Shown: positions 1,988 through 37,406 of the stretch, piece after piece
Position numbering within the stretch: position 1 is the stretch's first letter
How the letters are laid out: each line of letters begins with the position of its first letter
From: Pseudomonas aeruginosa PAO1
Lineage (GTDB): Bacteria > Pseudomonadota > Gammaproteobacteria > Pseudomonadales > Pseudomonadaceae
Assembly (NCBI RefSeq): GCF_000006765.1
Contig: NC_002516.2
Length of the DNA stretch: 64,000 nt
Strand: one strand, 5' to 3'
The notes under the pieces: generated by a model
Told to the model about the DNA's origin: nothing
The model's database searches: none
Seen by the model: only the letters and a program-made list of their open reading frames with translations
Position numbers and translations under genes: made by a program

Positions 1988-1998
1988 GCCGCGCGACG

Positions 1999-2026
1999 GA
2001 ACAAGCCGCCTTCGGGCGGCTTGTTC
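1999..2026. terminator. Intrinsic terminator between convergent mqoB and the VOC pseudogene
   Basis: GAACAAGCCGCC-TTCG-GGCGGCTTGTTC, 12 bp stem. Confidence 0.75.
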
Positions 2027-2036
2027 ATTTGTGGAG

Positions 2037-2450: not shown

Positions 2451-2664
2451 GGGAACCTCGGCAGGCTGTTTTTCCTGTGAGTGTAGAAAAGCAGCAGCCT
2501 CTCGCAGAGCGAATAAAGCAGTCCTGGCCATTGCCCCCCCCTGTCTCCCTGGCGCTCCGCAATGCGAGAAGGCCCGTATGCCTATCGTCCCTTGCCACCG
2601 CCAGCCGTCATTCGGGTGCTGGCGTTCGCCGACGGGTGGGATTCTTCGGCGGGCCGCGCAACGA

Positions 2665-2690
2665 AAAAGCCCGCCGAAGGGCGGGCTTTT
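2665..2690. terminator. Intrinsic terminator downstream of the PA4642-type gene
   Basis: AAAAGCCCGCC-GAAG-GGCGGGCTTTT hairpin with A/T tails. Confidence 0.75.
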
Positions 2691-2705
2691 CACCGCATGG
2701 CCGGC

Positions 2706-2996
2706 TCAGGCGCCCTTGGCCGCCTGCAGCGCTTCGATGTAGGGCGCGGCCTGGCGCTGGTCGGCGACCAGGGCGACGAAGTCGTTGCCCTTGGCGTCGC
2801 GCGCATCGAGATCGTAGCCGGCCTCGCGGAAGAAGGTGAGGAAGCGCTCGAAGTCGTCGATGCGCAGGCCGCGATAGGCCTTGATCAGCTTGTGCAGCGA
2901 GGGGGGCGTGTCGTCGGCCGGCTCGACGCCGAGGAACAGCTTGATCGACTCGTCACTGATCTCTTCGCCAATGATCTGTTTCTTGTCTTTGCGCAT
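2706..2996 (-). CDS. Conserved hypothetical protein (PA4642 family)
   Basis: 96 aa ORF with normal codon usage; MRKDKKQIIGEEI..AYRGLRIDDFERF. Confidence 0.8.
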   Translation of the reverse strand: MRKDKKQIIGEEISDESIKLFLGVEPADDTPPSLHKLIKAYRGLRIDDFERFLTFFREAGYDLDARDAKGNDFVALVADQRQAAPYIEALQAAKGA

Positions 2997-3078
2997 CGCT
3001 TTCTCTCAACGGCTCTGGGGCCGGGCTCGCCCGGCGCGGGATAAGGCCAGGCAGTTTACTCCCGGCGCGCGGCGAGGC

Positions 3079-3564
3079 TCAACGCGCGCGTACCGCGCCG
3101 GTGTGCAGGTCGGCCCAGACATGGCCGTTGGGATAGGCGAGGAACTGGCAATAGACCGTCTGGTTGCGCAGCAGGTCGAGCAACGCCGGGTACTGCGCCA
3201 GCGGGTAGTTGAGCGTGAGGGTGCGGGTCCCGGCATCGTAGACCGGCTTCTTCAGGCTCTTGCCTTCGCTGTCGAACTGGATCAGCACCTGGGCCAGGGT
3301 CGCGCCCTTGCTCAGCGGTTTGCCCTTCAGGCGCAGCAGGGTCGGCGTGGTGATCGGGATCGGCTGCTGGTTGGACTGCCGCTGGTTGCCCAGCACCACA
3401 CTGTACTCGGTGATCTGGATCAGTTGCTGCTGCTCCGGCGCCTCCTGGCGCAACTGGCCGTCGTCGGGCGGCAGGAAGCGCGCGTGCATCGGGGGATTCT
3501 CGGCGGCCAGGCCGGCCAGACTGACGAACAGAAGCAGGGAGCCGCACAGGCTACGGGCGAACAT
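3079..3564 (-). CDS. Hypothetical exported protein
   Basis: 161 aa; Sec-type signal peptide ending LAGLA-AE; GAGG RBS upstream. Confidence 0.75.
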   Translation of the reverse strand: MFARSLCGSLLLFVSLAGLAAENPPMHARFLPPDDGQLRQEAPEQQQLIQITEYSVVLGNQRQSNQQPIPITTPTLLRLKGKPLSKGATLAQVLIQFDSEGKSLKKPVYDAGTRTLTLNYPLAQYPALLDLLRNQTVYCQFLAYPNGHVWADLHTGAVRAR

Positions 3565-3631
3565 CGGGACCTCCGGACAGGGCGAGTCGGCACTCTAGCA
3601 TGGCTGCCGACCCGCCGCCGAAGCGAAGCGC

Positions 3632-4105
3632 TCAGGCGAACTGGGCGCGCATCCAGTCCCGGTAGGCCGGCGCATCGGCGCTGCCTTCGGCAGGCGCCCA
3701 ACTGGCGAACTCGCCTTCGCCGAGCGGGCGGTAAGGCCCGGCCTTGCATTCGAACAGGATGCTGTCCGGCTCCAGCACCACCAGGGCATGGAACACCCCG
3801 GGCGGCAGGTCGACACCGGGGCAGTCCCCAGCGGCGCTCAACTCGCGCTTGTCGAGGAGTTCCCCGTCCTCGGCGAAGACCAGCAGGCCGAGACGGCCCT
3901 TGAGCACGATCAGCGCCTCGGCCTTGCCCGCATCCAGGTGCCGGTGCGGCGGGATGTAGGTATTCGGCTGGAGGCCCACCGCCATGCGATGGCAGGGCTC
4001 CTCCATGCGGTGGAAGTTGTGATGCTGGCGACCACGCGGCGCGTTACCCGCCCCGCTCGCCAGTTCGGCGAACAATTGCTGGTCGAGGTAGCGCGGTCCG
4101 GCCAT
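3632..4105 (-). CDS. WbuC-family cupin-fold metalloprotein
   Basis: RQHHNFH, YIPPHRH, PPGVFHALV, FECKAGPY cupin motifs; ATG at 4105 directly after the hpt stop. Confidence 0.85.
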   Translation of the reverse strand: MAGPRYLDQQLFAELASGAGNAPRGRQHHNFHRMEEPCHRMAVGLQPNTYIPPHRHLDAGKAEALIVLKGRLGLLVFAEDGELLDKRELSAAGDCPGVDLPPGVFHALVVLEPDSILFECKAGPYRPLGEGEFASWAPAEGSADAPAYRDWMRAQFA

Positions 4106-4106
4106 C

Positions 4107-4664
4107 TCAGAGCCCCTTGACCGCGAAGATGCCCGCGGCGTTGCGCCAGTAGCCCTTGTAGTCCATGCCGTAGCCGAACACGTAGCGGTCGGCACAGTAG
4201 AGGCCGGTGAAGCTGGCCTTGAGGTCAGGCCGGGCCTTGCGCTCGTGTTCCTTGTCCACCAGTACGGCGGTGTGCACCGCGCGTGCGCCGGCATGCTTGC
4301 AGAAGTCGATGATCGCCGAGAGGGTGTGCCCTTCGTCGAGGATGTCGTCGATGATCAGCACATCACGGTCGATGAAGGAGATTTCCGGCTTGGCCTTCCA
4401 GAACAGTTCGCCGCCGGAGGTCTCGTTGCGGTAACGGGTCGCATGCAGGTAGGACAGTTCGAGGGGGAAGTCGAGCAGCGGGAGCAGCTTGCCGGAGAAG
4501 ATCAGGCCGCCGTTCATCACGCAGAAGACCACCGGGTTGGTCTCGCCGAGATCGCGGTTGATCGCCTCGGCGACGCGACCGATGGCTGCCTCGACCTCGT
4601 CGTTGTTGAACAGGCAGTCGGCTTCCGCCCTGACTTGGCGGATGTGCGCGAGATCGACGGACAT
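4107..4664 (-). CDS. hpt: Hypoxanthine-guanine phosphoribosyltransferase
   Basis: PRPP-binding VLIIDDILDEGHT, VFGYGMDY; AGGGAG RBS before ATG 4664. Confidence 0.92.
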   Translation of the reverse strand: MSVDLAHIRQVRAEADCLFNNDEVEAAIGRVAEAINRDLGETNPVVFCVMNGGLIFSGKLLPLLDFPLELSYLHATRYRNETSGGELFWKAKPEISFIDRDVLIIDDILDEGHTLSAIIDFCKHAGARAVHTAVLVDKEHERKARPDLKASFTGLYCADRYVFGYGMDYKGYWRNAAGIFAVKGL

Positions 4665-4832
4665 GGTGCTTCTCCCTGGCTGGGCTGAGAAAAAGTCGGC
4701 AAAGGTACTCATCCGGTCGCCATCGGGCAACCCCCGGCGGTCGAGTGCGAATCAGAATAATGGTCCAGACTGTGCGGAATGCATTACGCTAGCGCAATTT
4801 TTTTGCCCGCCCCCCGTTGGAGACAGTCGCCC

Positions 4833-5471
4833 ATGCCCGTACATGAGATCCGCCACCCCCTCATCCGCCACAAACTGGGCCTGATGCGCCGTGCCGATAT
4901 CAGCACCAAGAACTTCCGCGAACTGGCCCAGGAAGTCGGCGCCCTGCTGACCTACGAAGCGACCAAGGACCTGCCCCTGGAACAGTACGAAATCCCCGGA
5001 TGGGCCGGCCCGGTGACGGTGGAGAAGATCTCCGGGAAGAAGATCACCGTGGTGCCGATCCTGCGCGCCGGCATCGGCATGCTCGACGGCGTGCTCAGCC
5101 TGATTCCCGGCGCCAAGGTCAGCGCGGTCGGCGTCGCCCGCAACGAAGAGACCCTGGAAGCACGCACCTACCTGGAAAAACTGGCGCCGGACATCGCCGA
5201 GCGACGCTCGCTGATCATCGACCCGATGCTCGCCACCGGTGGCTCGATGGTCGCCACCATCGACCTGCTGAAGAAGGCCGGCAGCAAGGAAATCCGCGCC
5301 ATGGTGCTGGTCGCCGCCCCCGAGGGCATCGAGGCGGTACGCAAGGCCCACCCGGACGTGATCATCTATACCGCCTCGATCGACGAGAAGCTCGACGAGA
5401 ACGGCTACATCATTCCGGGCCTGGGCGACGCCGGCGACAAGATCTTCGGTACCAAGCAGAAGGAAGCCTGA
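4833..5471 (+). CDS. upp: Uracil phosphoribosyltransferase
   Basis: [37 protein letters not shown]; GGAG RBS before ATG 4833. Confidence 0.96.
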
Positions 5472-5473
5472 AC

Positions 5474-6757
5474 ATGGGCGATGCCTTCCAGGAGCCGCTC
5501 TGGCGCCAGGTGCTGTCAGGCGCGCAGATGCTGTTCGTCGCCTTCGGCGCGCTGGTGCTGATGCCGCTGATCACCGGTCTGGATCCCAACGTCGCGCTGT
5601 TCACCGCCGGCCTCGGGACCCTGCTGTTCCAATTGGTGACCGGGCGCCAGGTACCGGTGTTCCTCGCCTCCAGCTTCGCCTTCATCACCCCGATCATCCT
5701 CGCCAAGGGCCAGTTCGGCCTGGCCGCGACCATGGGCGGGGTAGTCGCCGCCGGCTTCGTCTACACCTTCATGGGCCTGGCGGTGAAGATCAAGGGCACC
5801 GGCTTCATCGATAAACTGCTGCCGCCGGTGGTGATCGGCCCGGTGATCATCTCGATCGGCCTGGCGATGGCGCCGATCGCGGCGAACATGGCGATGGGCA
5901 AGGCCGGCGACGGCAGCGAGTTGCTGCCGTACCGCACCGCGATGATGATCTCGATGCCGGCGCTGCTCACCACCCTGGTGGTGGCGGTATTCGGCAAGGG
6001 TATATTCCGCCTGGTGCCGATCATCGCCGGCGTGCTGGTCGGCTTCGCCCTGTCGTTCGTCTTCGGCGTGGTCGACACCGCCGCGATCGTCGCCGCACCC
6101 TGGCTGGAGCTACCGAAATTCACCGCGCCGGAATTCAACTGGCAGGCGATCCTGTTCATCGTCCCGGTGGCCCTGGCCCCGGCCATTGAGCATATCGGCG
6201 GGGTCATCGCGGTGGGCGGCGTCACCGGCCAGGACTACCTGAAGAAGCCCGGCCTGCACCGCACTCTCCTCGGCGACGGCCTGGCCACCTCGGCTGCCGG
6301 CCTGTTCGGCGGACCGCCCAACACCACCTACGCGGAAGTCACCGGCGCAGTGATGCTGACCAAGAACTACAACCCGAAGATCATGACCTGGGCGGCGGTG
6401 ATCGCCATCACCCTGGCCTTCGTCGGCAAGTTCGGCGCGATCCTGCAAAGCATCCCGGTACCGGTGATGGGCGGCATCCTCTGCCTGCTGTTCGGCACCA
6501 TCGCCTCGGTCGGCATGAACACCCTGATCCGGCACAAGGTCGATCTCTCGGAAGCACGCAACCTGGTGATCGTCTCGGTGACCCTGGTGTTCGGCATCGG
6601 CGGCGTGCTGATCGGCAGCGGTACCGGCCCCGACGACATCGGCCTGAAGGGCATCGCCCTGTGCGCCATCGTCGCCATCGTCCTCAACCTGTTGCTGCCG
6701 GGCAACGACGGCTGGCAGAACAAGGCGCTCGACGAACAACACAAGGATTCACACTGA
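5474..6757 (+). CDS. uraA: Uracil permease (NCS2 family)
   Basis: Polytopic membrane protein with LASSFAF and GGPPNTTYAE; starts 2 nt after upp. Confidence 0.93.
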   Translation: MGDAFQEPLWRQVLSGAQMLFVAFGALVLMPLITGLDPNVALFTAGLGTLLFQLVTGRQVPVFLASSFAFITPIILAKGQFGLAATMGGVVAAGFVYTFMGLAVKIKGTGFIDKLLPPVVIGPVIISIGLAMAPIAANMAMGKAGDGSELLPYRTAMMISMPALLTTLVVAVFGKGIFRLVPIIAGVLVGFALSFVFGVVDTAAIVAAPWLELPKFTAPEFNWQAILFIVPVALAPAIEHIGGVIAVGGVTGQDYLKKPGLHRTLLGDGLATSAAGLFGGPPNTTYAEVTGAVMLTKNYNPKIMTWAAVIAITLAFVGKFGAILQSIPVPVMGGILCLLFGTIASVGMNTLIRHKVDLSEARNLVIVSVTLVFGIGGVLIGSGTGPDDIGLKGIALCAIVAIVLNLLLPGNDGWQNKALDEQHKDSH

Positions 6758-6764
6758 AAACAAC

Positions 6765-6790
6765 GGACGGAACACTTCGCTGTTCCGTCC
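6765..6790 (+). terminator. Terminator-like hairpin after uraA
   Basis: GGACGGAACA-CTTCGC-TGTTCCGTCC followed by ATTTT. Confidence 0.6.
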
Positions 6791-6799
6791 ATTTTCCAC

Positions 6800-7090
6800 C
6801 CGCCACGTTATTTTCAAAAGCATGTAGCCAATCGCTTACTACTTTGTAATTAAACTTCCCTGTATTTTCCAAATAATCACGTCATCTAACTGGCAGAGGC
6901 TTATTCGCGCTGCTATATAGCCAGTCAAGCATGACTGGCGAGCCGCTCTGCGCCGCACCCGGCGCGTCGCCAGCCATGAACTTCGAGTTTGGCGGATATA
7001 TAAGGCCGATCATTTAAAGTCGTGGGAACTTTATTTATCCGCCAACATCGTCCTGCGCCACCGACATTCGTTATCGACAGGAAGTTAGAG
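6800..7090 (+). promoter_or_regulatory. AT-rich cupE promoter/leader region
   Basis: Visibly AT-rich intergenic tract upstream of cupE1, containing two inverted repeats (6920-6939; 6989-6998 with 7036-7045). Confidence 0.6.
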
Positions 7091-7639
7091 ATGAATAAAC
7101 GCATTCCGGCAGTCTTGTTGTTCTGTGCCTGCGCCAGCCTGCTGGGCACCGCCCAGGCCGCCGGTACGCTGATCGGCCAGGTCGGCGTGCAGATGGTCAT
7201 CGGTGCCGGCTGCACCATCATCAACGGCAGCGTCAGCGGCGGTATCAACCAGTGGGGAACCCTGGACTTCGGCAGCCATTCCGACCTCACCAACGTGGTC
7301 GACGCGCAGACCGTCGGCACCAGCGGCAATATCCAGATCCAGTGCAGCACCGGCCTGACCCCGAGCCTGACGGTGAACGCAGGCCTGCACGCCAGCGGCG
7401 GCCAGCGCTACATGCAGAACACCACCACCACCAGCAGCACCATCGCCTACAACATCTATTCGGACGCCGCGCGCAGCGCGCTGATCCAGGCCAACACACC
7501 GGTGGACATCTCCTCGGTCTCCACCGGCACCGCGGTCAACATCCCCCTCTATGGCCGCGTGGTGCCCACCGGACAAAGCACACCCACGCCGACGGCGGGG
7601 ACCTACACCGACACCCTGCTGGTCACCATCGCCTGGTAA
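7091..7639 (+). CDS. cupE1: Archaic chaperone-usher major pilin CupE1 (spore coat U/Csu type)
   Basis: Signal peptide, IGAGC, WGTLDFG, IQCS, YNIYSD, C-terminal GTYTDTLLVTIAW. Confidence 0.92.
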   Translation: MNKRIPAVLLFCACASLLGTAQAAGTLIGQVGVQMVIGAGCTIINGSVSGGINQWGTLDFGSHSDLTNVVDAQTVGTSGNIQIQCSTGLTPSLTVNAGLHASGGQRYMQNTTTTSSTIAYNIYSDAARSALIQANTPVDISSVSTGTAVNIPLYGRVVPTGQSTPTPTAGTYTDTLLVTIAW

Positions 7640-7669
7640 GACGCGCCGCCAGGCGCGGCGCCAGGCAGC

Positions 7670-8203
7670 ATGGTCCTGGGGGGACCGATGAGCCTGAACC
7701 GCTACTTCACCGGAGGACTGCTCTGCCTGCTCGGCTGCAACCCGGCAAACGCGCAGACCGCCACCATCGTCCTGAGCGCCACGCTGCTCCCGGCCTGCGA
7801 GGCAGGTAGCGTCGGCAGCGGCGGCGCGATCACCTTCGGCACCCTCGACTTCGGCCAGTACGCCTCCCTGAACAACGCCATCAGCGCCACCAGCCAGCAA
7901 GGCGCAGGCTCCATCCGGGTCAGGTGCGTCAGCGGCCAGACCTATGCGATCACGCTCGACGGCGGGCTCTACGGCAGCGTCGCCACGCGGCGCATGGCGA
8001 ACATCGCCAACACCGCCCTCACCCTGACCTACAACCTGTACAGCGACCGCCCCGGCGGCATCGTCTGGGACAACACCACCGGCGTTGCCGCCACCGGCAA
8101 CGGCAACGACCAGTGGTACCCCATCTACGGCCTGGTGCCGGCACAGACCACGCCGGTCGCCGGGACCTACCGCGACACCGTCAACGTGACCATCAGTTGG
8201 TGA
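7670..8203 (+). CDS. cupE2: Minor pilin CupE2
   Basis: LLPAC, FGTLDFG, YNLYSD, GTYRDTVNVTISW; alternative start at 7688. Confidence 0.9.
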   Translation: MVLGGPMSLNRYFTGGLLCLLGCNPANAQTATIVLSATLLPACEAGSVGSGGAITFGTLDFGQYASLNNAISATSQQGAGSIRVRCVSGQTYAITLDGGLYGSVATRRMANIANTALTLTYNLYSDRPGGIVWDNTTGVAATGNGNDQWYPIYGLVPAQTTPVAGTYRDTVNVTISW

Positions 8204-8745
8204 TGCCGATGTCCAGCCGGCGTCTATTCCTGTCGCTTCTCCTGCTCCCGCTGCCGAACCTGGTCGCGCATGCCGATCCATCGCCGATCAGCCGCGCCTT
8301 CCAGGTCCAGGCGGTGGTCGCCAACGGCTGCGCCTTCGGCACCGCCATCAGCAACAACGCCTATGACCTCGGCACCCTGAGCTTCGGCACCCTCGGCAAC
8401 CTGGCCAGTCCGGTTAACGTCGCCAGCAGCTCCGGGGCCGGCTCCATCGTCCTGACCTGCACTCCGGGAATGACCGTCTCCGTCGCCCTCGACTACGGGG
8501 TCAATGGCGGCAGCAGCAGCCAGCGCTACCTGAAGCGGGTGAGCGGTAACGAGACCCTCGCCTACCAGCTCTACCAGGATGCCGCCTACTCCCAGGTCTG
8601 GGGCAACGGGGCACTCGCGCGGACCATCGCCAACTTTCCCGCCAGCACCCAGACCTACACGGTATACGCGCGCCTGTTCGCGGTCGGCAGCCTGCCGTCC
8701 GCCGGCAACTACCGCGATACCGTCACCGTCACCCTTTCGTTCTGA
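8203..8745 (+). CDS. cupE3: Minor pilin CupE3
   Basis: TGATG overlap with cupE2; VANGC, LGTLSFG, YQLYQD, GNYRDTVTVTLSF. Confidence 0.9.
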   Translation: MPMSSRRLFLSLLLLPLPNLVAHADPSPISRAFQVQAVVANGCAFGTAISNNAYDLGTLSFGTLGNLASPVNVASSSGAGSIVLTCTPGMTVSVALDYGVNGGSSSQRYLKRVSGNETLAYQLYQDAAYSQVWGNGALARTIANFPASTQTYTVYARLFAVGSLPSAGNYRDTVTVTLSF

Positions 8746-8763
8746 GCCGTCATGGAGGATCAC

Positions 8764-9552
8764 ATGCCCAGTCCACACCTACCTCTCCGCCCCAGCCGCT
8801 GGCTTGCGGCGCTGCTGGCGCTGCTCCTGGGCGGCCCGGCACAGGCCGCCAGTGCGGTGCTGATCTGGCCGATCAACCCGGCCATCGAAGCCGACCAGCC
8901 GGCCACGGCGCTGTGGCTGGAGAATCGCGGCAAGCAACCGGTGACCCTGCAGGTGCGCGTGCTCGGCTGGTCCCAGGCGGATTTCCAAGACGTCTATCGC
9001 AACCAGCAGGCAGTGATTCCCAGCCCGCCCTTCGTCAAGGTCGAGCCGGGCCGCCGGCAACTGGTCCGGCTGATCCGCCAGGGCGGCCAGCCCAGCACGC
9101 CGGAGGACGCCTACCGGGTGCTGATCGACGAAGTGCCCGACGGCGACGCGGGGCAGACGCAACGAAGCCCCGGTCTCGCCCTGCAGTTCCAGATGCGCTA
9201 TTCGGTACCGCTGTTCGTCAGCGCCGACGGCGTCTGGACCCAGCCGCGTAGCGATGTCGAGCGCGACCCGGCCGACGCGACCCGGCCGAAGCTGGCCTGG
9301 CGGCTGGTCGAGGAACAGGGCAAGCGTTACCTGCAGGTGCGCAACGAGGGTAGCGTGCACGCCCGCCTCAGCCATGTCCGCTGGGAGGGCAACGGCCGCA
9401 GCCTGGCGCTGCTGGACGGCCTTCTCGGCTACGTGCTGCCCGGCCGGCAGATGCGCTGGCCGCTGCCGCCGGGGCTGCTGCCGGACTCCGGCATGACCCT
9501 GAAACTGCAACTGGCGGACAACGACGCGCCGATCAGCGTTCCCGGGTACTGA
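8764..9552 (+). CDS. cupE4: Periplasmic pilus chaperone CupE4
   Basis: PapD-like LWLEN, QVRVLGW, EDAYRVLIDEVP, MRYSVPLF; GGAGG RBS before ATG 8764. Confidence 0.92.
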   Translation: MPSPHLPLRPSRWLAALLALLLGGPAQAASAVLIWPINPAIEADQPATALWLENRGKQPVTLQVRVLGWSQADFQDVYRNQQAVIPSPPFVKVEPGRRQLVRLIRQGGQPSTPEDAYRVLIDEVPDGDAGQTQRSPGLALQFQMRYSVPLFVSADGVWTQPRSDVERDPADATRPKLAWRLVEEQGKRYLQVRNEGSVHARLSHVRWEGNGRSLALLDGLLGYVLPGRQMRWPLPPGLLPDSGMTLKLQLADNDAPISVPGY

Positions 9553-9568
9553 GGCGGACGTCGGTCCC

Positions 9569-11941
9569 GTGCCTCGCCCGTGTCAGCGGCGCTCTCGCCG
9601 CCACCGCTCGCTACTGATCGGCCTGGCGCTGCTCTCCCCTGTCCATGCGGCGGACTACCTGGCCGGACTGCCGCCGCCGCAACCCGCTCCGTCCGGCGGC
9701 GGCAACGTCCTCTACTACTTGGAACTGGTGATCAACGGCCGCGACAGCGGCCAGGTGGTGCCGGTCAACGCCGCCGATGGCCATTACCTGCTCGACGCCG
9801 CGGCCCTGCGCGAAGCCGGCGTGCGCCTGCCTGGCAACCCCGCCGGACAGGTCGCGGTGGACGCCCTGCCCGAGGTCCGGGCGGACTATGACAGCGCCAG
9901 CCAGCAACTGCACCTGCAAGTGCCGCCGGACTGGCTGCCGGAGCAGCGCTTCGACGATCCCGGACTGGTCGCCCGCGCCCCGGCGCGCAGCAGCCTCGGC
10001 GCGCTGTTCAACTACGACCTGTACTACTCGGACCCCGCCGACGGCGCCACGCCCTGGCTTTCCGCGCTGCTCGAGCAACGCCTGTTCGACGGCTTCGGGG
10101 TGATCTCCAACACCGGCGTCTACACCCGCTATTTCGGCGACGCCGACAACCTCGACAGCCGCTACCTGCGCTACGACACCTACTGGCTGTACAACGACGA
10201 ACGCAACATGCACAGCTACCAACTGGGCGACTACGTCAACGGCGCGCTGAACTGGACCACCCCGGTACGCATGGGCGGCTTTCGCTTCGCCCGCAACTTC
10301 GGCGTACGTCCGGACCTGGTCACCTATCCGCTGCTGCGCTTCGACGGCCAGGCCGCCGTACCCAGCACCGTCGACCTGTTCATCAACGGCTACAAGGCCA
10401 GCAGCGCCGACCTGCAACCCGGTCCCTTCGCCATCAGCAACGTGCCGTACATCAACGGAGCCGGCGAAGCCACGGTGGTGACCACCGACGCCCAGGGTCG
10501 ACAAGTGGTGACCAGCCTGCCGTTCTACGTATCCAACACCCTGCTGGCGCGCGGCCTGAGCGATTTCGACCTGTCCGTCGGGCGCCTGCGCGACGACTAC
10601 GGCCTGCGCAACTTCTCCTATGCCGACAACGCCGCCAGCGGCATCTACCGCTACGGCGTCAGCGACCGCCTGACCCTCTCCACCCACGCCGAGGCCGCCA
10701 GCGACCTGCGCCTGCTCGGCATCGGCGGCGACATCGCCGTGGCCACCTTCGGCACCCTCAGCCTGGCGGCCAGCGGCAGCGACGGCCAGGGCGACAGCGG
10801 CCAGCAATACCTGCTCGGCTACTCCTACTATTCGCGACGGCTCGGCCTCAGCCTGCAACACATCGAGCGCAGCGCCGGCTATGGCGACCTCGGCACCCTG
10901 GACGGCGAGTACCAGTTGAGCCGGCGCACCGACCAGGCTACCGCCAGCCTGACCTTCGACGAGCAGGGCACCATCGGTACCGGCTACTTCGACATCCGCG
11001 CCCGCGACGGCAGCCGCACGCGCCTGGCCAACCTCTCCTATAGCCGCCCGATCGGCAGCCGCAGCAGCTTCTACCTGGCGCTGAACAAGGATCTCGACGG
11101 CGACGGCTACAGCGCGCTGATGCAACTGGTGATTCCCTTCGACATCAACGGCCTGCTGAACATCGGCGTCACCCGCGACAGCGACCGGCGCTACAGCGAG
11201 CGGGTGATCTGGAGCCGCTCCACACCGAGCCAGGGCGGCCTCGGCTGGAACCTCGGCTATGGCGGCGGCGCCAGCCGCTACCAGCAGGCCGACTTGACCT
11301 GGCGCATGCAGAACGTGCAACTGCAGGGCGGCCTCTATGGCGAGACCGGCAACTACACGCGCTGGGCCGATCTCAGCGGCTCGCTGGTATGGATGGACAA
11401 CGCCGTGTTCGCCAGCAATCGGATCAACGACGCCTTCGTCCTGGTCAGCACCAAGGGTTATCCACAGGTGCCGATCCGCTACGAGAACCAACTGATGGGC
11501 AGCACCGACGACAACGGCCACCTGCTGGTGCCCTGGGTCGCGGCCTACTACCCGGCGAAGTTCCAGATCGAGCCGCTGGACCTTCCGGCCAACGTCAGCG
11601 CGCCCGAAGTCGAGCAGCGCGTGGCGGTACGCCAGGGCAGCGGCCTGCTGCTGGATTTCCCGATCCGTGCCGTAGTCGCCGCCAGCATCAGCCTGGTGGA
11701 CGAGCGCGGCGAACCGCTGCCGCTGGGCAGCCAGGCCGAAGAAACCGGCAGCGGCCAGCGCGCCAGCGTCGGCTGGGACGGCCAGGTCTATTTCGAAGGA
11801 TTGCAAAGCGACAACCAGCTACGCGTGGTCCGCCCCGACGGCCGGGCCTGCCAGGCACGCTTCCGCCTGGACACGCGCAAACCCACCGTCAGCCAGGTCG
11901 GCCCGCTGACCTGCTCGGCCCCGATCGGAGATACGCCATGA
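9569..11941 (+). CDS. cupE5: Outer-membrane usher CupE5
   Basis: 790 aa; YYLELVING, GALFNYDLY, PSTVDLFING, PGPFAI usher motifs. Confidence 0.93.
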   Translation: MPRPCQRRSRRHRSLLIGLALLSPVHAADYLAGLPPPQPAPSGGGNVLYYLELVINGRDSGQVVPVNAADGHYLLDAAALREAGVRLPGNPAGQVAVDALPEVRADYDSASQQLHLQVPPDWLPEQRFDDPGLVARAPARSSLGALFNYDLYYSDPADGATPWLSALLEQRLFDGFGVISNTGVYTRYFGDADNLDSRYLRYDTYWLYNDERNMHSYQLGDYVNGALNWTTPVRMGGFRFARNFGVRPDLVTYPLLRFDGQAAVPSTVDLFINGYKASSADLQPGPFAISNVPYINGAGEATVVTTDAQGRQVVTSLPFYVSNTLLARGLSDFDLSVGRLRDDYGLRNFSYADNAASGIYRYGVSDRLTLSTHAEAASDLRLLGIGGDIAVATFGTLSLAASGSDGQGDSGQQYLLGYSYYSRRLGLSLQHIERSAGYGDLGTLDGEYQLSRRTDQATASLTFDEQGTIGTGYFDIRARDGSRTRLANLSYSRPIGSRSSFYLALNKDLDGDGYSALMQLVIPFDINGLLNIGVTRDSDRRYSERVIWSRSTPSQGGLGWNLGYGGGASRYQQADLTWRMQNVQLQGGLYGETGNYTRWADLSGSLVWMDNAVFASNRINDAFVLVSTKGYPQVPIRYENQLMGSTDDNGHLLVPWVAAYYPAKFQIEPLDLPANVSAPEVEQRVAVRQGSGLLLDFPIRAVVAASISLVDERGEPLPLGSQAEETGSGQRASVGWDGQVYFEGLQSDNQLRVVRPDGRACQARFRLDTRKPTVSQVGPLTCSAPIGDTP

Positions 11942-34026: not shown

Positions 34027-34103
34027 GGCTACATAGCTCAGTCGGTTAGAGCGCAGCATTCATAATGCTGATGTCCCAGGTTCAAGTCCCGGTGTAGCCA
34101 CCA
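34027..34103 (+). tRNA. tRNA-Met (CAT)
   Basis: Acceptor stem GGCTACA/TGTAGCC, CAGCA-TTCATAA-TGCTG anticodon arm, GGTTCAAGTCC, CCA end. Confidence 0.95.
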
Positions 34104-34111
34104 TATTTTTC

Positions 34112-34140
34112 AAGGGGTTAGCGCAAGCTAACCCCTTTTT
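34112..34140 (+). terminator. Terminator after tRNA-Met
   Basis: AAGGGGTTAGC-GCAA-GCTAACCCCTT plus T tract. Confidence 0.85.
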
Positions 34141-34153
34141 GTTTTGGTCGGCA

Positions 34154-34175
34154 GACTACAAACCGACTACAAACC
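34154..34175 (+). repeat. Tandem 11-bp direct repeat (integrase arm-like)
   Basis: GACTACAAACC twice, 50 nt downstream of the tRNA 3' end. Confidence 0.8.
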
Positions 34176-34210
34176 GTCTACGCCCCCCTTTACCGATTTA
34201 CGGTTCGCAT

Positions 34211-34235
34211 AAAAAAGCCCCGCATCTGCGGGGCT
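34211..34235 (-). terminator. higBA terminator
   Basis: GCCCCGCA/TGCGGGGC stem with a T6 tail on the minus strand. Confidence 0.75.
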
Positions 34236-34253
34236 CTACGATCAACGTCACTG

Positions 34254-34559
34254 CTATCCGTGAGCAAGCAGCGGCTCAATCTCATGTTCGATCTGCTTGC
34301 CATTCGCCGCATAAGCAGTTGCTAACGAATACTCACTCTGGAGATTCATCCAGAACTGAGCGGACGTATCAAAGTAACGCCCCAGACGAATCGCCATATC
34401 TGCGGAGATACCACGCTGCTCACGAACGATATCGTTCACTGTCGGAGCGGAGACTTTCAAAGCGCGTGCTAGAGCAGCTGGAGAGATATCAAACTCCATC
34501 AGAAACTCATCGCGCAATATTTCCCCAGGATGGATGGGGCGCATACCATTGGTAGCCAT
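34254..34559 (-). CDS. higA: Antitoxin HigA (XRE helix-turn-helix)
   Basis: IHPGEILRDEF..ISADMAIRLGRYF..SAQFWMNLQ; GGAGG RBS. Confidence 0.95.
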   Translation of the reverse strand: MATNGMRPIHPGEILRDEFLMEFDISPAALARALKVSAPTVNDIVREQRGISADMAIRLGRYFDTSAQFWMNLQSEYSLATAYAANGKQIEHEIEPLLAHG

Positions 34560-34570
34560 GGTCCACCTCC

Positions 34571-34849
34571 TCAGTGGTAATCAACTATTTCGACTTCTTC
34601 GGGACCCGCATCCGTCCAGACGAAACAGACACGCCACTGGTCATTGATCCTGATGCTATGTTGGCCCGCCCGCTTTCCCTGCAACGGCTCCAACCGGTTT
34701 CCAGGTGGAGAGCGCAGGTCTCGAAGCTCCGTAGCCGCATGAAGCATTGCGAGCTTACGCGTAGCGACTGTGAGGATCGCTCCCCACCGCCTCGAAAGAC
34801 CCGTCTCAAAAAGCTGACGAGTCTCGTCGCAGCGAAAGGTCAGAATCAT
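34571..34849 (-). CDS. higB: Toxin HigB (RelE/ParE fold)
   Basis: DLRSPPGNRLEPLQG..HSIRINDQWRVCF..DYH; toxin precedes antitoxin. Confidence 0.95.
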   Translation of the reverse strand: MILTFRCDETRQLFETGLSRRWGAILTVATRKLAMLHAATELRDLRSPPGNRLEPLQGKRAGQHSIRINDQWRVCFVWTDAGPEEVEIVDYH

Positions 34850-34859
34850 TCATTAACCC

Positions 34860-34877
34860 TTAACGTTAAGCGTTAAC
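34860..34877. promoter_or_regulatory. Palindromic higBA operator
   Basis: TTAACGTTAA (34860-34869) and GTTAAC (34872-34877) just upstream of the higB ATG. Confidence 0.75.
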
Positions 34878-34879
34878 TT

Positions 34880-34922
34880 CACTACAGATTACCACAGATC
34901 CTCATGTGGTCAATTTGTAGCC
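34880..34922. repeat. Degenerate arm-like repeats at the integrase 3' end
   Basis: Plus strand CACTACAGAT/TACCACAGAT (34880-34899); minus strand GGCTACAAATT/GACCACATGAG (34922-34901). Confidence 0.55.
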
Positions 34923-35045
34923 AGACTGAGTAATCGGAGAAAAGCGCATCGCCGATTCCAAGTGCTCCGGCGACAGATGTGCATACCGCATCATCATCGA
35001 GGAATGCCCGAGGATCCGCTGTAGGGCCACGCCATGCGCAGCGCC
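34902..35045 (-). pseudogene. Tyrosine integrase C-terminal remnant
   Basis: LQRILGHSS..MRYAHLSPEHLESA retains the LGH box and catalytic Tyr; no N-terminal or R/HxxR domains. Confidence 0.8.
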
Positions 35046-35105
35046 CCGTGTCAGGCATTTCATCTTGCTTTGGATGCCAGGCATGCCTCATTGAAACAGT
35101 TCGAA

Positions 35106-35124
35106 TCATTTGATAATCATTATC
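35106..35124. promoter_or_regulatory. Fur box upstream of chtA
   Basis: TCATTTGATAATCATTATC matches the GATAATGATAATCATTATC consensus at 14 of 19 positions. Confidence 0.8.
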
Positions 35125-35177
35125 GATTTGTTTAGCTTTGCCGCCCATCAAAACAACAGCAACTCGGAAATCTCCTC

Positions 35178-37406
35178 ATGCCCCGCTCCATCCCTTTGCG
35201 CCCGGCTCCCCTGGCGCTTTCCCTGTCCCTCTTCGCTTCGTTTTCCGCTCCTGCGCTGGCTGCCGATCCGGTGGAGCAGCAGATGGTGGTGATCGGCTCG
35301 CGCGCGCCGACCAGCATCAGCGAGTTGCCCGGCACGGTCTGGGTGATCGAGCGCGAGCAACTGGACCAGCAGACCCAGGCCGGCGTGCCGCTGAAGGAGG
35401 CGTTGGGACAATTGATCCCGGGCCTGGATATCGGCTCCCAGGGTCGTACCAACAACGGCCAGAACCTGCGCGGACGCAGCGTACTGGTGATGATCGACGG
35501 GGTGTCGCTGAACAGTTCACGGGGCATCAGCCGGCAGTTCGACTCCATCGACCCATTCAACATCGAGCGCATCGAGGTGATGTCCGGCGCCAGCGCGGTG
35601 TACGGCGGCGGCGCCACCGGCGGGATCATCAACATCGTGACCAAGAAGGGCGTCGGCGGCGACACTCGCTTCAACACCGAGCTGGGCGCCCGCAGCGGCT
35701 TCCAGAGCCATGAGGACCACGACCTGCGCGCGGCGCAGTCGATCAGCGGCGGCAACGACCTGTTCAACGGCCGCCTGGCCATCGCCTACCAGAAGAACGG
35801 CGCGGCCTACGACGGCAGTGGCGACCAGGTACTGACGGACATCACCCAGACCGACCTGCAGTACAACAGGTCGGTGGACCTGATGGGCAGCCTTGGCTTC
35901 ACTTTCGCCAATGGCCACAGCCTCGATCTCGGCCTGCAGTACTACGACTCCGGCTACGACGGCGACCGCGGCCTCGATCTTGGGCGCAACTTCGATGCCC
36001 TGCGCGGACGGGCACCCTATTCGATCAAGGGCGGCGTCGACCTCGACCGCGAGCCGGAGAGCAAGCGCCATCAGTTCAACGCCACCTACCACGCGCCGGA
36101 AGTGCTGGGTCACGACCTCTACCTGCAGGCCTACTACCGCAACGAGAAGATGGCCTTCAATCCCTTCCCTACCATCCGCTACAGCAATACCGGCGCGATC
36201 AACTACGGCACCTCCTACTACTCGGCCTCGCAGCAGGACACCGACTACTACGGGATGAAACTGGCCCTGGTGAAGACCTGGGAGCGCGCCAGCCTGACCT
36301 ACGGGGTGGACCTGGACCGGGAAAAATTCACGTCCGACCAGATGCTCTTCAACCTGCCGCTCGCCGCCGCCAGCGGCGGGCTGGTAGCCAGTGAACAGGC
36401 CAAGCTGGGCCGCTACCCGGACATCGATACCGACAGCCGCGCCTTCTTCCTCCAGGGCAGTTGGAAGGCCACCGACGACCTGACCCTGAGCGCCGGCGTG
36501 CGGCGCCAGTCGATGAGCACCGACGTCAGCGACTTCGTTGCGGCGAACCAGCAGATCCTCATCGCCAACGGCCTCGGCAAGACCGCCGACGCGGTTCCGG
36601 GCGGGAGCAAGGACTACGACGTCAACCTGGTCAACGTCGGCGCCATCTACAAGCTGAACCTGCAACAACAGGTCTGGGCCAACTACAGCGAAGGCTTCGA
36701 GCTGCCGGATCCGGCCAAGTACTACGGTTTCGGACGCTACGGCGCAGCCGACGGCAATGGCCACTACCCGCTGTTGCAGGGGGTCAGCGTGAACGACTCG
36801 CCGCTGGACGGGATCAAGACCAAGCAGGTCGAGCTGGGCTGGCGGCACACCGACGGTGCCCTGGATACCCAGGTGGCGGCGTTCTATTCCTGGTCGGACA
36901 AGAGCATCAAGTACGACTCGAAGACCCTGGCGGTGCTGCAGCAGGACACCAAGAAGCGCAACTACGGCCTGGAGGGCCAGGCTACCTACTGGCTGGACGA
37001 TCACTGGCAGGTCGGCGTCAACGGCCTGGCCATCCGCTCCCAGGAGAAGGTCGACGGCCGCTGGCTGAAGCAGGACGTGACCTCGGCCAGCCCGTCCAAG
37101 GCCGGCGCCTTCGTCGGCTGGAAGGACGACCAGCGCAGCCTGCGCCTGCAGGGCGTGCGCACCTTCAACCTGAACGACGAGCCGGGCAACAAGATCGACG
37201 GCTACGCGCTGTTCGACCTGCTCGGCACCCAGGCGCTGCCGGTGGGCACCCTCACCGCGGGCATCCAGAACCTGCTGGACAAGGACTACACCACGGTCTG
37301 GGGACAACGCGCGCAGGTCTACTACGGCGGGCTCGCACCAGCGGGACTGTTCGACTACAAGGGACGGGGGCGGACCTACAGCCTGACGTATAGCGTGGAG
37401 TTCTGA
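35178..37406 (+). CDS. chtA: TonB-dependent xenosiderophore receptor (IutA-like)
   Basis: Signal peptide, QMVVIGSR TonB box, IERIEVMSGASAVYGGGATGGIINI plug motif, terminal YSVEF; Fur box upstream. Confidence 0.88.
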   Translation: MPRSIPLRPAPLALSLSLFASFSAPALAADPVEQQMVVIGSRAPTSISELPGTVWVIEREQLDQQTQAGVPLKEALGQLIPGLDIGSQGRTNNGQNLRGRSVLVMIDGVSLNSSRGISRQFDSIDPFNIERIEVMSGASAVYGGGATGGIINIVTKKGVGGDTRFNTELGARSGFQSHEDHDLRAAQSISGGNDLFNGRLAIAYQKNGAAYDGSGDQVLTDITQTDLQYNRSVDLMGSLGFTFANGHSLDLGLQYYDSGYDGDRGLDLGRNFDALRGRAPYSIKGGVDLDREPESKRHQFNATYHAPEVLGHDLYLQAYYRNEKMAFNPFPTIRYSNTGAINYGTSYYSASQQDTDYYGMKLALVKTWERASLTYGVDLDREKFTSDQMLFNLPLAAASGGLVASEQAKLGRYPDIDTDSRAFFLQGSWKATDDLTLSAGVRRQSMSTDVSDFVAANQQILIANGLGKTADAVPGGSKDYDVNLVNVGAIYKLNLQQQVWANYSEGFELPDPAKYYGFGRYGAADGNGHYPLLQGVSVNDSPLDGIKTKQVELGWRHTDGALDTQVAAFYSWSDKSIKYDSKTLAVLQQDTKKRNYGLEGQATYWLDDHWQVGVNGLAIRSQEKVDGRWLKQDVTSASPSKAGAFVGWKDDQRSLRLQGVRTFNLNDEPGNKIDGYALFDLLGTQALPVGTLTAGIQNLLDKDYTTVWGQRAQVYYGGLAPAGLFDYKGRGRTYSLTYSVEF

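What the first reader, a model, noticed from the sequence alone, without database searches (positions are those of the whole stretch)
34154..34923. higBA is bracketed by a family of integrase arm-like repeats
Seen: GACTACAAACC twice in tandem (34154-34175) just after the tRNA terminator. On the other side of higBA are CACTACAGAT/TACCACAGAT (plus strand, 34880-34899) and GGCTACAAATT/GACCACATGAG (minus strand, 34922-34901). The minus-strand pair encodes the last codons of the integrase relic. The shared core is about (A/G)C(T/C)ACA. TGTAGCCA at 34916-34923 also equals the tRNA 3' end at 34093-34100, which may be chance. Knowledge: tyrosine integrases bind tandem 10-12 bp arm sites flanking att cores, often overlapping the int 3' end. 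Inference: a largely intact att arm architecture survives, and higBA lies inside it.
Basis: partly seen in the sequence, partly recalled or inferred. Interest (0 to 1): 0.65.

Follow-up and report, generated by a model that had tools for sequence, protein, structure and literature searches.

The report
Pf prophage stump carrying higBA
The well-studied higBA toxin-antitoxin pair of Pseudomonas aeruginosa sits in the stump of an old filamentous (Pf) prophage beside tRNA-Met. The tandem repeat next to the tRNA is most likely a surviving integrase docking site, while the repeats on the other side are mainly the higB promoter.

Summary
The two sides have different standing.

**Left side.** GACTACAAACC x2 plus GTCTAC (34154-34181) is a conserved three-site block at 11-bp phase.
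- It follows the tRNA-Met 3' end in every related Pf-tRNA-Met prophage examined.
- A strict 28-nt pattern found 45 viral contigs and 34 genome stretches, where about 0.3 genome hits are expected by chance.
- A fourth copy (GGGTGACTACAT) lies about 103 nt before the other att copy in intact elements.
- The cognate integrase is P2/HP1-family and has the N-terminal arm-binding domain. P2's own arm sites are TGTGGACAC pairs at 11 bp.
- I read the left repeats as the surviving P' arm.

**higBA.** It is cargo between the P' arm and int. Two sister species carry complete 13-kb Pf prophages with higBA in the same slot.

**Right side.** The cluster (34880-34922) is statistically unusual.
- Its arm-like cores are lost in a more distant intact higBA-Pf.
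- What stays conserved is TTGACC-N13-TGnTAnnCT followed by the HigA operator, which reads as the higB promoter.

The true P arm, the second core copy and all other Pf genes are deleted. The att architecture is therefore not intact, and the segment should not be excisable.

The parts
34027..34103 (+). tRNA-Met (CAT), integration target of Pf-tRNA-Met phages
   Evidence: ARAGORN; the same tRNA precedes all related loci.
34058..34139 (.). Block identical to the 66-82 bp direct repeat (att core region) of Pf-tRNA-Met prophages. It runs from the anticodon loop through the tRNA terminator.
   Evidence: Identical to the annotated repeat_region of phages 54-4 and 99-2. RNA-run contigs of other strains join Pf P-arm DNA exactly at 34058.
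34112..34137 (+). tRNA-Met intrinsic terminator hairpin
   Evidence: 11-bp perfect inverted repeat (I7); terminator scan.
34154..34164 (+). P' arm-type site R1 (GACTACAAACC)
   Evidence: Core GACTAC(A/G)AA is invariant at this position, about 49 nt past the tRNA end, in all related loci.
34165..34175 (+). P' arm-type site R2 (GACTACAAACC)
   Evidence: Core GACTACA is invariant, 11 bp after R1.
34176..34181 (+). P' arm-type site R3 (GTCTAC), weaker third unit
   Evidence: GTC(T/C)AC is conserved 11 bp after R2. Sequences diverge completely after it.
34216..34235 (-). Hairpin followed by a T-run on the - strand: probable higA terminator
   Evidence: 9-bp perfect inverted repeat (I19). An RNA-run contig covering higA ends at 34182 (record 5).
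34254..34559 (-). higA antitoxin (101 aa)
   Evidence: ORF; Pfam HTH_3; PaHigA literature, PMC6987408.
34571..34849 (-). higB toxin (92 aa)
   Evidence: ORF; Pfam HigB-like_toxin, E 6e-16.
34853..34876 (.). HigA operator (TTAACGTTAA palindromes), also the reported CprR site
   Evidence: Palindrome (I14); PMC6987408; PMC10805311 Table S1. Invariant in all higB lineages.
34886..34894 (-). Inferred extended -10 of the higB promoter (TGGTAATCT on the - strand)
   Evidence: TGnTAnnCT is invariant in five lineages (alignment A1). An equivalent TA(T/A)nCT is present in further lineages. Inference; no TSS data.
34908..34913 (-). Inferred -35 of the higB promoter (TTGACC on the - strand), inside int codons Leu-Thr
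   Evidence: TTGACC is invariant, 16 nt upstream of the -10. TTGACG-N16-TAT(T/C)CT is seen in lineages that lack the int tail.
34880..34899 (+). It overlaps the -10.
   Evidence: 34878 is 7/9 to GTGACTACA. Cores are changed in G018 and G025.
34901..34922 (-). It is the last int codons, contains the -35, and forms an 11-bp phased pair at 7/9 to the arm consensus.
   Evidence: Present only in the aeruginosa/paraeruginosa lineage, near threshold in G034, lost in G018.
34902..35029 (-). Integrase relic: about 41 C-terminal codons plus the stop, with a two-codon deletion (SSITMTM to SSMMM)
   Evidence: 74% identity to residues 282-330 of Pf-tRNA-Met Int. Homology with the longer fragment in G015 ends at 35029.
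35029..35050 (.). Deletion junction between the int relic and the chromosomal DNA upstream of the TonB-dependent receptor gene
   Evidence: In G015 the two sides lie about 10 kb apart, separated by Pf genes and two further att copies.

Best explanation
Window 34104-35029 is the tRNA-proximal (attL-type) stump of a decayed Pf-tRNA-Met filamentous prophage.

**Integrase and arm sites.** The prophage's integrase is a heterobivalent P2/HP1-family tyrosine recombinase. Its N-terminal domain docks on short 'arm-type' sites while its core-binding and catalytic domains act in the tRNA anticodon-loop region. I infer that the three 11-bp phased units R1-R3 (34154-34181) are the P' arm of that system. 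They lie 94-122 bp from the start of att identity at 34058. In P2 the P' arm lies about 100-126 bp from the centre of the attP core.

**higBA.** The pair is accessory cargo that rode between the P' arm and the 3' end of int.

**What was lost.** A later deletion removed int upstream of about codon 290, all Pf replication and structural genes, the single P-arm site and the distal att copy. The stump should therefore no longer excise.

**Right-hand repeats.** They lie in the int tail and in the 22-bp gap before the HigA operator. Their present role is the higB promoter: -35 TTGACC, then the extended -10 TGGTAATCT, then the operator. Their likeness to arm sites is either a faint vestige or coincidence.

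**Shown versus inferred.** Shown: sequence anatomy, conservation, integrase family, and intact relatives. Inferred: Int binding to R1-R3, promoter function, and the order of events.
For: 1. **Pf origin.**
- The att block plus R1-R3 and the int 3' end match Pf phages 54-4, 99-2 and the PfAC series.
- G034 and G018 carry complete ~13-kb prophages bounded by tRNA-Met direct repeats. Their order is P' repeats, higA, higB, full int, rep, structural genes, xis, repressor.
- G015 (P. paraeruginosa ATCC 9027) has an intermediate state: a 169-aa int fragment joined to coaB.

2. **Arm-site signature.**
- In two whole Pf genomes GTGACTACA occurs exactly three times, all in one orientation: two in tandem on the int side of att and one about 100 nt inside the other end.
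- A 12-nt block GGGTGACTACAT is invariant in an otherwise variable P arm across five elements.
- R1-R3 are invariant in core while the flanks diverge.
- The strict three-site pattern hits 45 IMG/VR contigs and 34 genome stretches, where about 0.3 genome hits are expected by chance. 29 of the 34 lie directly after a tRNA-Met 3' end. Cargo length varies from 9 to about 2150 nt.
- The native attB flank in G034 lacks the repeats, so they are phage DNA.

3. **Integrase.**
- It is 33% identical to P2 Int over its full length, N-terminus included.
- Structure matches: HP1 Int Z 24 and P2 Int Z 21.
- Residues 1-49 are predicted as a three-stranded sheet plus helix, pLDDT 85. The best fold match is the AP2/GCC-box DNA-binding domain, Z 5.0.
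- P2's annotated arm sites are TGTGGACAC pairs at 11 bp, with the P' arm overlapping the int 3' end (consensus tgTGGaCa in PMC3448106).
- In cargo-less relatives, the R3-R2-R1 sequence encodes the int tail CGHAVVTS-stop.

4. **Promoter.**
- The invariant columns in the five-lineage alignment are TTGACC, TG, TA, CT and the operator.
- Other higB lineages have TTGACG-N16-TAT(T/C)CT and no RCYACA motifs.
Against: - No binding data exist for any Pf integrase arm site. I found none described in the literature.
- Sites on both arms in one orientation fit Int best, but an excisionase or host factor is not excluded.
- The right-hand cluster is statistically unusual. It includes an 11-bp phased pair in the int tail, exactly where P2 and cargo-less Pf keep their P' arm. 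A link to arm sites therefore cannot be dismissed.
- The promoter is inferred from conservation only. The consensus scan did not call it, because the -10 matches only 3 of 6 positions.
- RNA data were contigs and cannot place a TSS.
Confidence: 0.7

Rival explanations
1. One reading: both flanks are arm-type integrase sites of one largely intact att architecture that brackets higBA, so the segment could still be recombined by a cognate integrase.
For: - Four RCYACA cores lie within 45 bp, the only such cluster in 64 kb.
- Three sites match GTGACTACA at 7/9, and a phased pair lies in the int tail.
- P2, cargo-less Pf-Met and Pf-Sec-type integrases all keep P' sites in the int tail.
Against: - The sites lie about 820-860 bp from the crossover region, far outside the roughly 130 bp spanned by arms in P2 and in intact Pf attP.
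- The cores are destroyed in the intact higBA-Pf of G018 and of IMG/VR contig L069, although their R1-R3 are perfect.
- They are absent from other Pf int tails.
- There is no second core copy to the right of higBA.
- The real P arm site is missing from the window.
Confidence: 0.1
2. The right-hand repeats are a fossil of an older P' arm that once overlapped the int tail, as in cargo-less relatives. They would have been stranded when higBA was captured between two P' copies, for example by aberrant excision next to an older stump, and later reused as the higB promoter.
For: - In cargo-less Pf-tRNA-Met elements, R3-R2-R1 encode the int tail.
- In tandem arrays and in lysogens a new prophage abuts an old P' arm, which gives the geometry needed for capture.
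- The + strand pair has the same orientation as R1-R2, and the phased-pair statistics give p of about 0.01.
- By eye, the 99-2-type int tail also shows R1-like remnants (reading of the output).
Against: - Local alignment of the right cluster to the P' arm is not significant (p 0.07 for the window; not significant for G034 and G018).
- The spacing is 10 bp, not 11 bp.
- The motif is lineage-restricted.
- A -35 TTGAC hexamer alone supplies 4 of the 9 consensus matches.
Confidence: 0.2
3. R1-R3 and the distal GGGTGACTACAT are binding sites for another factor, such as the Pf-tRNA-Met excisionase, the phage repressor or a host architectural protein, rather than for the integrase N-domain.
For: - Excisionases also bind phased direct repeats. 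P2 Cox sites lie between the core and the P' arm.
- Xis-Met is specific to this phage group (PMC7549136).
Against: - Sites sit on both arms in one orientation.
- They are 7/9 identical to P2 Int arm sites with the same 11-bp phase.
- The same motif recurs next to P2-family integrases of only 44-45% identity in unrelated Yersinia/Sodalis-type contexts.
- The Pf-Sec-type integrase has its own different repeat in the equivalent place, as expected if the repeat tracks the integrase.
Confidence: 0.12

Closest known systems
Bacteriophage P2 attP (P arm, IHF, core, Cox sites, P' arm) and P2 Int
   Same: - Integrase family: 33% identity over the full length, N-terminal arm-binding part included.
- Arm sites are 9-mers in direct pairs at 11-bp phase: TGTGGACAC in P2 against TGTAGTCAC here, 7/9 identical.
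- All sites share one orientation on both arms.
- The P' arm lies about 100-126 bp from the core.
- In cargo-less relatives the P' arm overlaps the int 3' end (PMC3448106).
   Different: - The host element is a filamentous inovirus, not a myovirus.
- The core lies in tRNA-Met.
- The P arm seems to hold one strong site at about -103 rather than a pair at -50 to -77.
- The P' arm has three units.
- A variable cargo slot (0 to about 2 kb) separates the P' arm from int.
- No binding data exist.
Pf-tRNA-Met prophages (Pf6 group; Fiedoruk et al. 2020, PMC7549136)
   Same: - Same tRNA-Met target and the same att identity block.
- The G034 higBA-Pf integrase is 91% identical to that of phage 54-4.
- The window's relic is 74% identical over its last 49 residues to the G034 integrase.
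   Different: - That paper defines a 46-bp attP fragment and integrase types. It describes no arm sites and no higBA link.
- The window keeps only the P' arm, the cargo and about 41 int codons.
PfiT/PfiA toxin-antitoxin of prophage Pf4 (PMC7264888)
   Same: A type II TA pair carried as accessory cargo of a Pf prophage, next to its integrase gene at the att-proximal end. The gene order PA0728 int, PA0729 toxin is from my own knowledge of PAO1 numbering.
   Different: - A different TA family (ParE/PhD-like) and a different integrase type (tRNA-Gly).
- Pf4 is an intact, active prophage.
- higBA here has outlived its phage and is counted as core genome (PMC5481352).
Lambda attP P'1-P'2-P'3 arm sites
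   Same: Three tandem arm-type sites on the P' side, bound by the N-terminal domain of a heterobivalent integrase (textbook knowledge). The N-domain is predicted as a three-stranded sheet plus helix.
   Different: Only distant sequence relation (Z about 15-17 over the core-binding and catalytic domains). The site sequence and the accessory proteins differ.

Membership tests
Arm-type (P') sites of a heterobivalent P2/HP1-family integrase: left tandem 34154-34181 | The cognate integrase has an N-terminal arm-binding domain in addition to its core-binding and catalytic domains | tested here: met
   - Full-length alignment to P2 Int from residue 6.
- Pfam Int_N plus Phage_integrase, with about 55 extra N-terminal residues.
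- Residues 1-49 predicted as beta3-alpha, pLDDT 85.
- The best fold match is only Z 5.0, to an AP2/GCC-box domain.
Arm-type (P') sites of a heterobivalent P2/HP1-family integrase: left tandem 34154-34181 | Short direct repeats at about one helical turn, present on both sides of the core in one orientation | tested here: met
   - The 11-bp phased R1-R3 lie after the core.
- A single GGGTGACTACAT lies about 103 nt before the distal core copy in five independent elements, on the same strand.
Arm-type (P') sites of a heterobivalent P2/HP1-family integrase: left tandem 34154-34181 | Conserved in att regions of related elements while the surrounding sequence varies | tested here: met
   There are 34 genome hits against about 0.3 expected by chance, and 29 of them lie directly after tRNA-Met.
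Arm-type (P') sites of a heterobivalent P2/HP1-family integrase: left tandem 34154-34181 | Belongs to the element, not to the naive bacterial attB flank | tested here: met
   - The flank after the distal att copy in G034 has no such repeats.
- G025 keeps higBA at tRNA-Met but has lost them.
Arm-type (P') sites of a heterobivalent P2/HP1-family integrase: left tandem 34154-34181 | Integrase N-domain binds the sites, and mutation impairs recombination | not testable with these tools
   Needs EMSA or footprinting and integration assays.
Arm-type sites: right-hand cluster 34880-34922 | Conserved in related elements that use the same integrase | tested here: not met
   - Cores are lost in the intact higBA-Pf of G018/L069 and in G025.
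- They are absent from other Pf int tails.
Arm-type sites: right-hand cluster 34880-34922 | Lies within intasome range of the core (about 150 bp or less) | tested here: not met
   820-860 bp from 34058. P2 and Pf arms lie within about 130 bp.
Arm-type sites: right-hand cluster 34880-34922 | Sequence match to the arm consensus beyond chance | tested here: inconclusive
   - Three sites at 7/9, and a phased pair with p of about 0.01.
- The alignment test gives p 0.07.
- The -35 hexamer supplies part of the match.
Pf-tRNA-Met filamentous prophage (as a remnant) | Integrated at the tRNA-Met 3' half with a direct repeat of that sequence | tested here: inconclusive
   Only the tRNA copy survives in the window. 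Relatives keep two or three copies.
Pf-tRNA-Met filamentous prophage (as a remnant) | Pf core genes (rep, ZOT-like, coat proteins, ssDNA-binding protein, xis, repressor) | tested here: not met
   - None lie between 34104 and 35177.
- They are present behind higBA-int in G034, G018 and partly G015.
- The window is therefore filed as a stump, not as a prophage.
Pf-tRNA-Met filamentous prophage (as a remnant) | Met-type integrase | tested here: met
   The relic is 74% identical to residues 282-330. DNA homology to Pf int 3' ends is seen.
HigBA type II toxin-antitoxin | HigB/RelE-fold toxin gene upstream of an HTH antitoxin gene, with an autoregulatory palindrome | tested here: met
   Pfam. The TTAACGTTAA operator is at 34853-34876 (PMC6987408).
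Sigma-70 promoter of higB | -35 and -10 hexamers with a 16-18 nt spacer, conserved across lineages, with a mapped TSS | tested here: inconclusive
   - Conservation is met.
- The consensus scan did not call it.
- The TSS cannot be obtained from contig-only RNA runs.

The most novel reading that the evidence does not exclude
Because the stump keeps a P' arm beside the tRNA, the P. aeruginosa 'attB' for Pf-tRNA-Met phages is really an attL-like site.
- Every new lysogen then carries a normal attL at its left end and a complete attP-like junction at its right end (new P arm, core, old P' arm). This is seen in RNA-run contigs and IMG/VR contigs.
- This composite junction could bias integration or excision, for example by trapping Pf6-type prophages. 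XisF6 was reported not to excise Pf6 in MPAO1 (PMC12328805).
- Integrase from a resident Pf could also bind the weak int-tail sites that overlap the higB -35 and -10, coupling phage state to HigBA expression.
Probability: 0.12. Interest if true: 0.7.

Novelty: new member of a known kind. Interest (0 to 1): 0.45.

Why it matters
- HigBA is one of the most studied toxin-antitoxin pairs of P. aeruginosa and is treated as core genome. Showing that it is the surviving cargo of a Pf filamentous prophage, still carried by intact Pf prophages in sister species, gives it an origin. It also ties it to the phage family that shapes P. aeruginosa biofilms.
- The analysis yields a concrete, testable candidate for the arm-type sites of the Pf-tRNA-Met integrase: GTGACTACA, three phased sites in the P' arm and one in the P arm. 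I found no description of these in the literature.
- The Pf6-type attachment site in P. aeruginosa is flanked by a leftover P' arm, which may matter for integration, excision and polylysogeny at this hotspot.

Tried and rejected
- **TGTAGCCA as a vestigial att core:** rejected. An 8-mer match is expected by chance, and the att identity starts at 34058 in the anticodon loop.
- **Right cluster as the CprR site:** rejected. The published CprR site is TTAACGTTAA, the HigA palindrome.
- **Right cluster as a lox- or dif-like core site (ACCACA, 8 nt, TGTGGT):** no similarity to the tRNA anticodon-region core, and not palindromic in G018.
- **Right cluster as an int terminator:** the hairpin has no T-run.
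- **Local alignment of the right cluster to the P' arm:** not significant.
- **RNA evidence for the higB TSS:** only Logan contigs were available, and they cannot show starts.
- **Pfam on the 60-aa relic ORF:** no hit because it is too short. The first ~19 residues of that ORF are not int-derived.
- **A literature search for the 8-mer TGTGGACA:** useless, 1969 unrelated hits.
- **The search of earlier findings:** tried four times and never open.
- **The window's own assembly:** not held, so population-level conservation within P. aeruginosa could be judged only from G001, G015 and IMG/VR contigs.
Full report
**1. Anatomy**

The window around the finding reads as follows:
- ychF-like gene
- tRNA-Met, 34027-34103
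- the tRNA's terminator hairpin, 34112-34137
- the tandem GACTACAAACC x2 plus GTCTAC, 34154-34181
- a hairpin that ends higA
- higA, 34254-34559, minus strand
- higB, 34571-34849, minus strand
- the HigA palindromes, 34853-34876
- the right-hand repeats, 34880-34922
- an open frame whose last ~41 codons are the C-terminus of a tyrosine recombinase, 34902-35029, minus strand
- the promoter region of a TonB-dependent receptor gene that starts at 35178

G+C content falls from about 64% to about 51% between 34000 and 35200. Pfam confirms HigB-like toxin and an HTH antitoxin.

**2. What the islet comes from**

A distant DNA search of phage records matched only the two ends of the islet: the tRNA 3' half plus terminator plus repeats, and the int 3' end. 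The matches are to Pseudomonas filamentous phages (54-4, 99-2, 62-2, PfAC series) whose records end 'integrase, [cargo], repeat_region'.

A search of the 34 species of the genus held here found higBA at tRNA-Met in several states:
- **G001:** identical to the window.
- **G015:** 97% identical. The int fragment is longer (169 aa) and is fused to Pf coat genes, followed by xis, the repressor and two more att copies. The genome-contig scan names this contig as Pseudomonas paraeruginosa ATCC 9027.
- **G034 and G018:** complete ~13-kb prophages bounded by direct repeats of the tRNA-Met 3' half. The order is P' repeats, higA, higB, full-length int, rep, structural genes, xis, repressor. The G034 integrase is 91% identical to that of phage 54-4.
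- **G025:** higBA with only a scrap of the int tail and no repeats.

The P. aeruginosa higBA locus is therefore the cargo end of a Pf-tRNA-Met prophage that has lost everything else. The literature I could search treats higBA as core genome (PMC5481352). It describes the Pf-tRNA-Met group without arm sites (PMC7549136). No paper held both 'higBA' and 'Pf6'.

**3. The left tandem is a conserved, phage-borne, two-arm motif**

- After the tRNA-Met terminator, every related locus has the same three units at 11-bp phase: GACTAC(A/G)AA.., GACTACA...., GTC(T/C)AC. The spacer before them varies, and the sequence after them is unrelated cargo.
- In two whole Pf genomes GTGACTACA occurs exactly three times, all on one strand: the tandem pair, and a single copy about 100 nt inside the other end.
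- That distal copy sits in a 12-nt invariant block GGGTGACTACAT, about 103 nt before the distal att copy. This holds in five independent elements whose P arms are otherwise poorly conserved.
- The native flank beyond the distal att copy in G034 lacks the repeats, so they belong to the phage.
- A strict 28-nt pattern for the three units found 45 IMG/VR contigs and 34 genome stretches. About 0.3 matches are expected by chance in the 596 Gb of genome contigs.
- 29 of the 34 genome hits lie directly after a tRNA-Met 3' end in Pseudomonas, Azotobacter and relatives. Int lies downstream at distances from 9 to about 2150 nt, and higBA is the cargo in several species.
- Five hits are in Yersinia- or Sodalis-type DNA. 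Viral contigs of that same group that do hold an integrase carry a P2-family one, 44-45% identical to the Pf integrase. The motif thus travels with the integrase clade rather than with tRNA-Met or Pf functions.

**4. The integrase is of the kind that uses arm sites**

- The full-length integrase of the G034 higBA-Pf aligns with P2 Int over its whole length: 33% identity, E 2e-55, N-terminus included.
- Its catalytic domain matches HP1 Int (Z 24.1) and P2 Int (Z 21).
- Residues 1-49 are predicted with pLDDT 85 as a three-stranded sheet followed by a helix. The best, though weak, fold match is the AP2/GCC-box DNA-binding domain (Z 5.0). From my own knowledge, this is the fold class of the lambda and Tn916 Int arm-binding domains.
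- The P2 record annotates P arm, IHF, core, Cox sites and a P' arm that overlaps the int 3' end.
- P2's sites are TGTGGACAC pairs at 11-bp spacing, 100-126 bp from the core. PMC3448106 gives the consensus tgTGGaCa and assigns arm recognition to the N-terminal domain.
- The Pf site read on the other strand is TGTAGTCAC, 7/9 identical. R1-R3 lie 94-122 bp from 34058.
- Position 34058 is where att identity begins. It is also where RNA-run contigs of other strains join Pf P-arm DNA to this sequence.
- In cargo-less Pf-tRNA-Met relatives the R3-R2-R1 sequence encodes the int tail CGHAVVTS-stop. A Pf-tRNA-Sec-type integrase in G001 has its own phased repeat (TTCGACAC) in its tail next to tRNA-Sec.

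All of this fits R1-R3 being the P' arm. Direct binding remains untested.

**5. The right-hand cluster**

It is a real local oddity.
- It is the only place in the 64 kb with four or more RCYACA hits in 45 bp, and no such cluster arose in 5000 shuffles.
- Using the independently derived consensus, it holds three 7/9 sites, including an 11-bp phased pair in the int tail. Only two such pairs exist in the window, and 48 of 5000 shuffles produced one.
- None occurs elsewhere in 144 kb of related loci, except after tRNA-Met.

Three things speak against a role as arm sites.
- **Distance.** It lies 820-860 bp from the crossover region.
- **Conservation.** In G018 and in IMG/VR contig L069, which are intact higBA-Pf elements with perfect R1-R3, all four cores are destroyed. 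G034 drifts away from the consensus. Pf integrases with other cargo have unrelated tails after the motif SP(I/L)xQ.
- **What is conserved instead.** The columns invariant across five lineages are TTGACC, then 13 nt, then TGnTAnnCT, then the HigA operator (alignment A1). That is a -35, a 16-nt spacer, an extended -10, and an operator just downstream. higB lineages that lack the int tail have TTGACG-N16-TAT(T/C)CT in the same place with no RCYACA motifs.

The published CprR site is the HigA palindrome, not these repeats.

A formal alignment of the cluster to the P' arm is not significant. I therefore read the cluster as the higB promoter laid over the int tail. There is a minority chance (about 0.2) that part of it is a fossil of a P' arm stranded at cargo capture, and about 0.1 that it still binds Int.

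**6. Consequences**

- The window keeps an attL-type half site: core plus P' arm. It has no P arm, no second core and no integrase.
- In strains that carry a Pf-tRNA-Met prophage, the phage's P arm and att copy abut this old P' arm. This recreates a full attP-like junction 207 nt long. Whether that alters integration or excision is open, and I give it as the novel case.

**7. Limits**

- No binding or TSS data were available.
- RNA runs were contigs only.
- The window's own assembly and the earlier-findings index were not available.
- Kin among the loci are not independent, so counts of loci overstate the number of independent observations. The argument rests on the contrast between invariant cores and diverged flanks.

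Noticed in passing
window 35103-35125: A Fur-box-like sequence (gataatcattatc) and a sigma-70-like promoter (TTGAAA-N18-AATCAT at 35091-35120) lie upstream of the TonB-dependent receptor gene at 35178-37406. This suggests iron regulation of that gene.
   Followed up: no
window 34058 (runs X22 and X24): RNA-run contigs of other strains carry different DNA up to 34057 (ending ...TTTCACATGCG). They then match the window exactly from 34058 through the old P' arm into higBA. This is the distal junction of a resident Pf prophage abutting the stump.
   Followed up: partly
window 34845 (run X24 record 9): A 4.7-kb RNA-run contig ends at 34845, four bases inside the higB ORF, followed by adapter letters. 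This hints at a preferred RNA end near the higB start. Contigs cannot prove a start or a strand.
   Followed up: no
window 34182-34640 (run X22 record 5): A separate 459-nt RNA-run contig covers higA and the distal part of higB only. This is consistent with the reported internal higA promoter inside higB.
   Followed up: no
L032:2469-2515 (G001, next to tRNA-SeC): A Pf-type integrase 45% identical to the Met type has three TTCGACAC units, the first two at 11-bp phase, in its last codons directly beside tRNA-SeC. This is a candidate P' arm for the Pf-tRNA-Sec integrase type.
   Followed up: partly
L026 (G015 = P. paraeruginosa ATCC 9027), 713-11870: A nested array sits at tRNA-Met. It holds a higBA stump with a Pf remnant (coaB to repressor), a second att copy with B-type P' sites and another int 3' relic, and a third att copy, all before the receptor-gene promoter.
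   Followed up: partly
alignment A2, columns ~145-156 (P arm, about 35 nt before att identity): A second conserved block, TTTA(T/C)(G/A)(G/A)GGCTT, lies in the P arm of five Pf-tRNA-Met elements. It could be a site for an accessory protein (Xis or IHF-like).
   Followed up: no
L096, L097, L100, L105, L109 and about 18 IMG/VR contigs (e.g. L058, L060): The same three-unit motif (GACTACAAAATGACTACATTGTGTCTAC type) occurs in Yersinia/Sodalis-type DNA away from tRNA-Met. In L058 and L060 a P2-family integrase (44-45% identical) reads towards it from about 280 nt away, in the opposite gene orientation to Pf.
   Followed up: partly
L027:480-1000 (G034): The intact higBA-Pf of G034 has about 480 extra bases between the P' arm and higA. 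This shows that the cargo slot can hold more than one insert.
   Followed up: no
L061:~12390 (IMG/VR contig, P. aeruginosa-like): A strain variant changes TGGTAATCT to TGGTAGTCT in the inferred -10. This creates an exact GACTAC core on the + strand, so the right-hand cluster is polymorphic.
   Followed up: no
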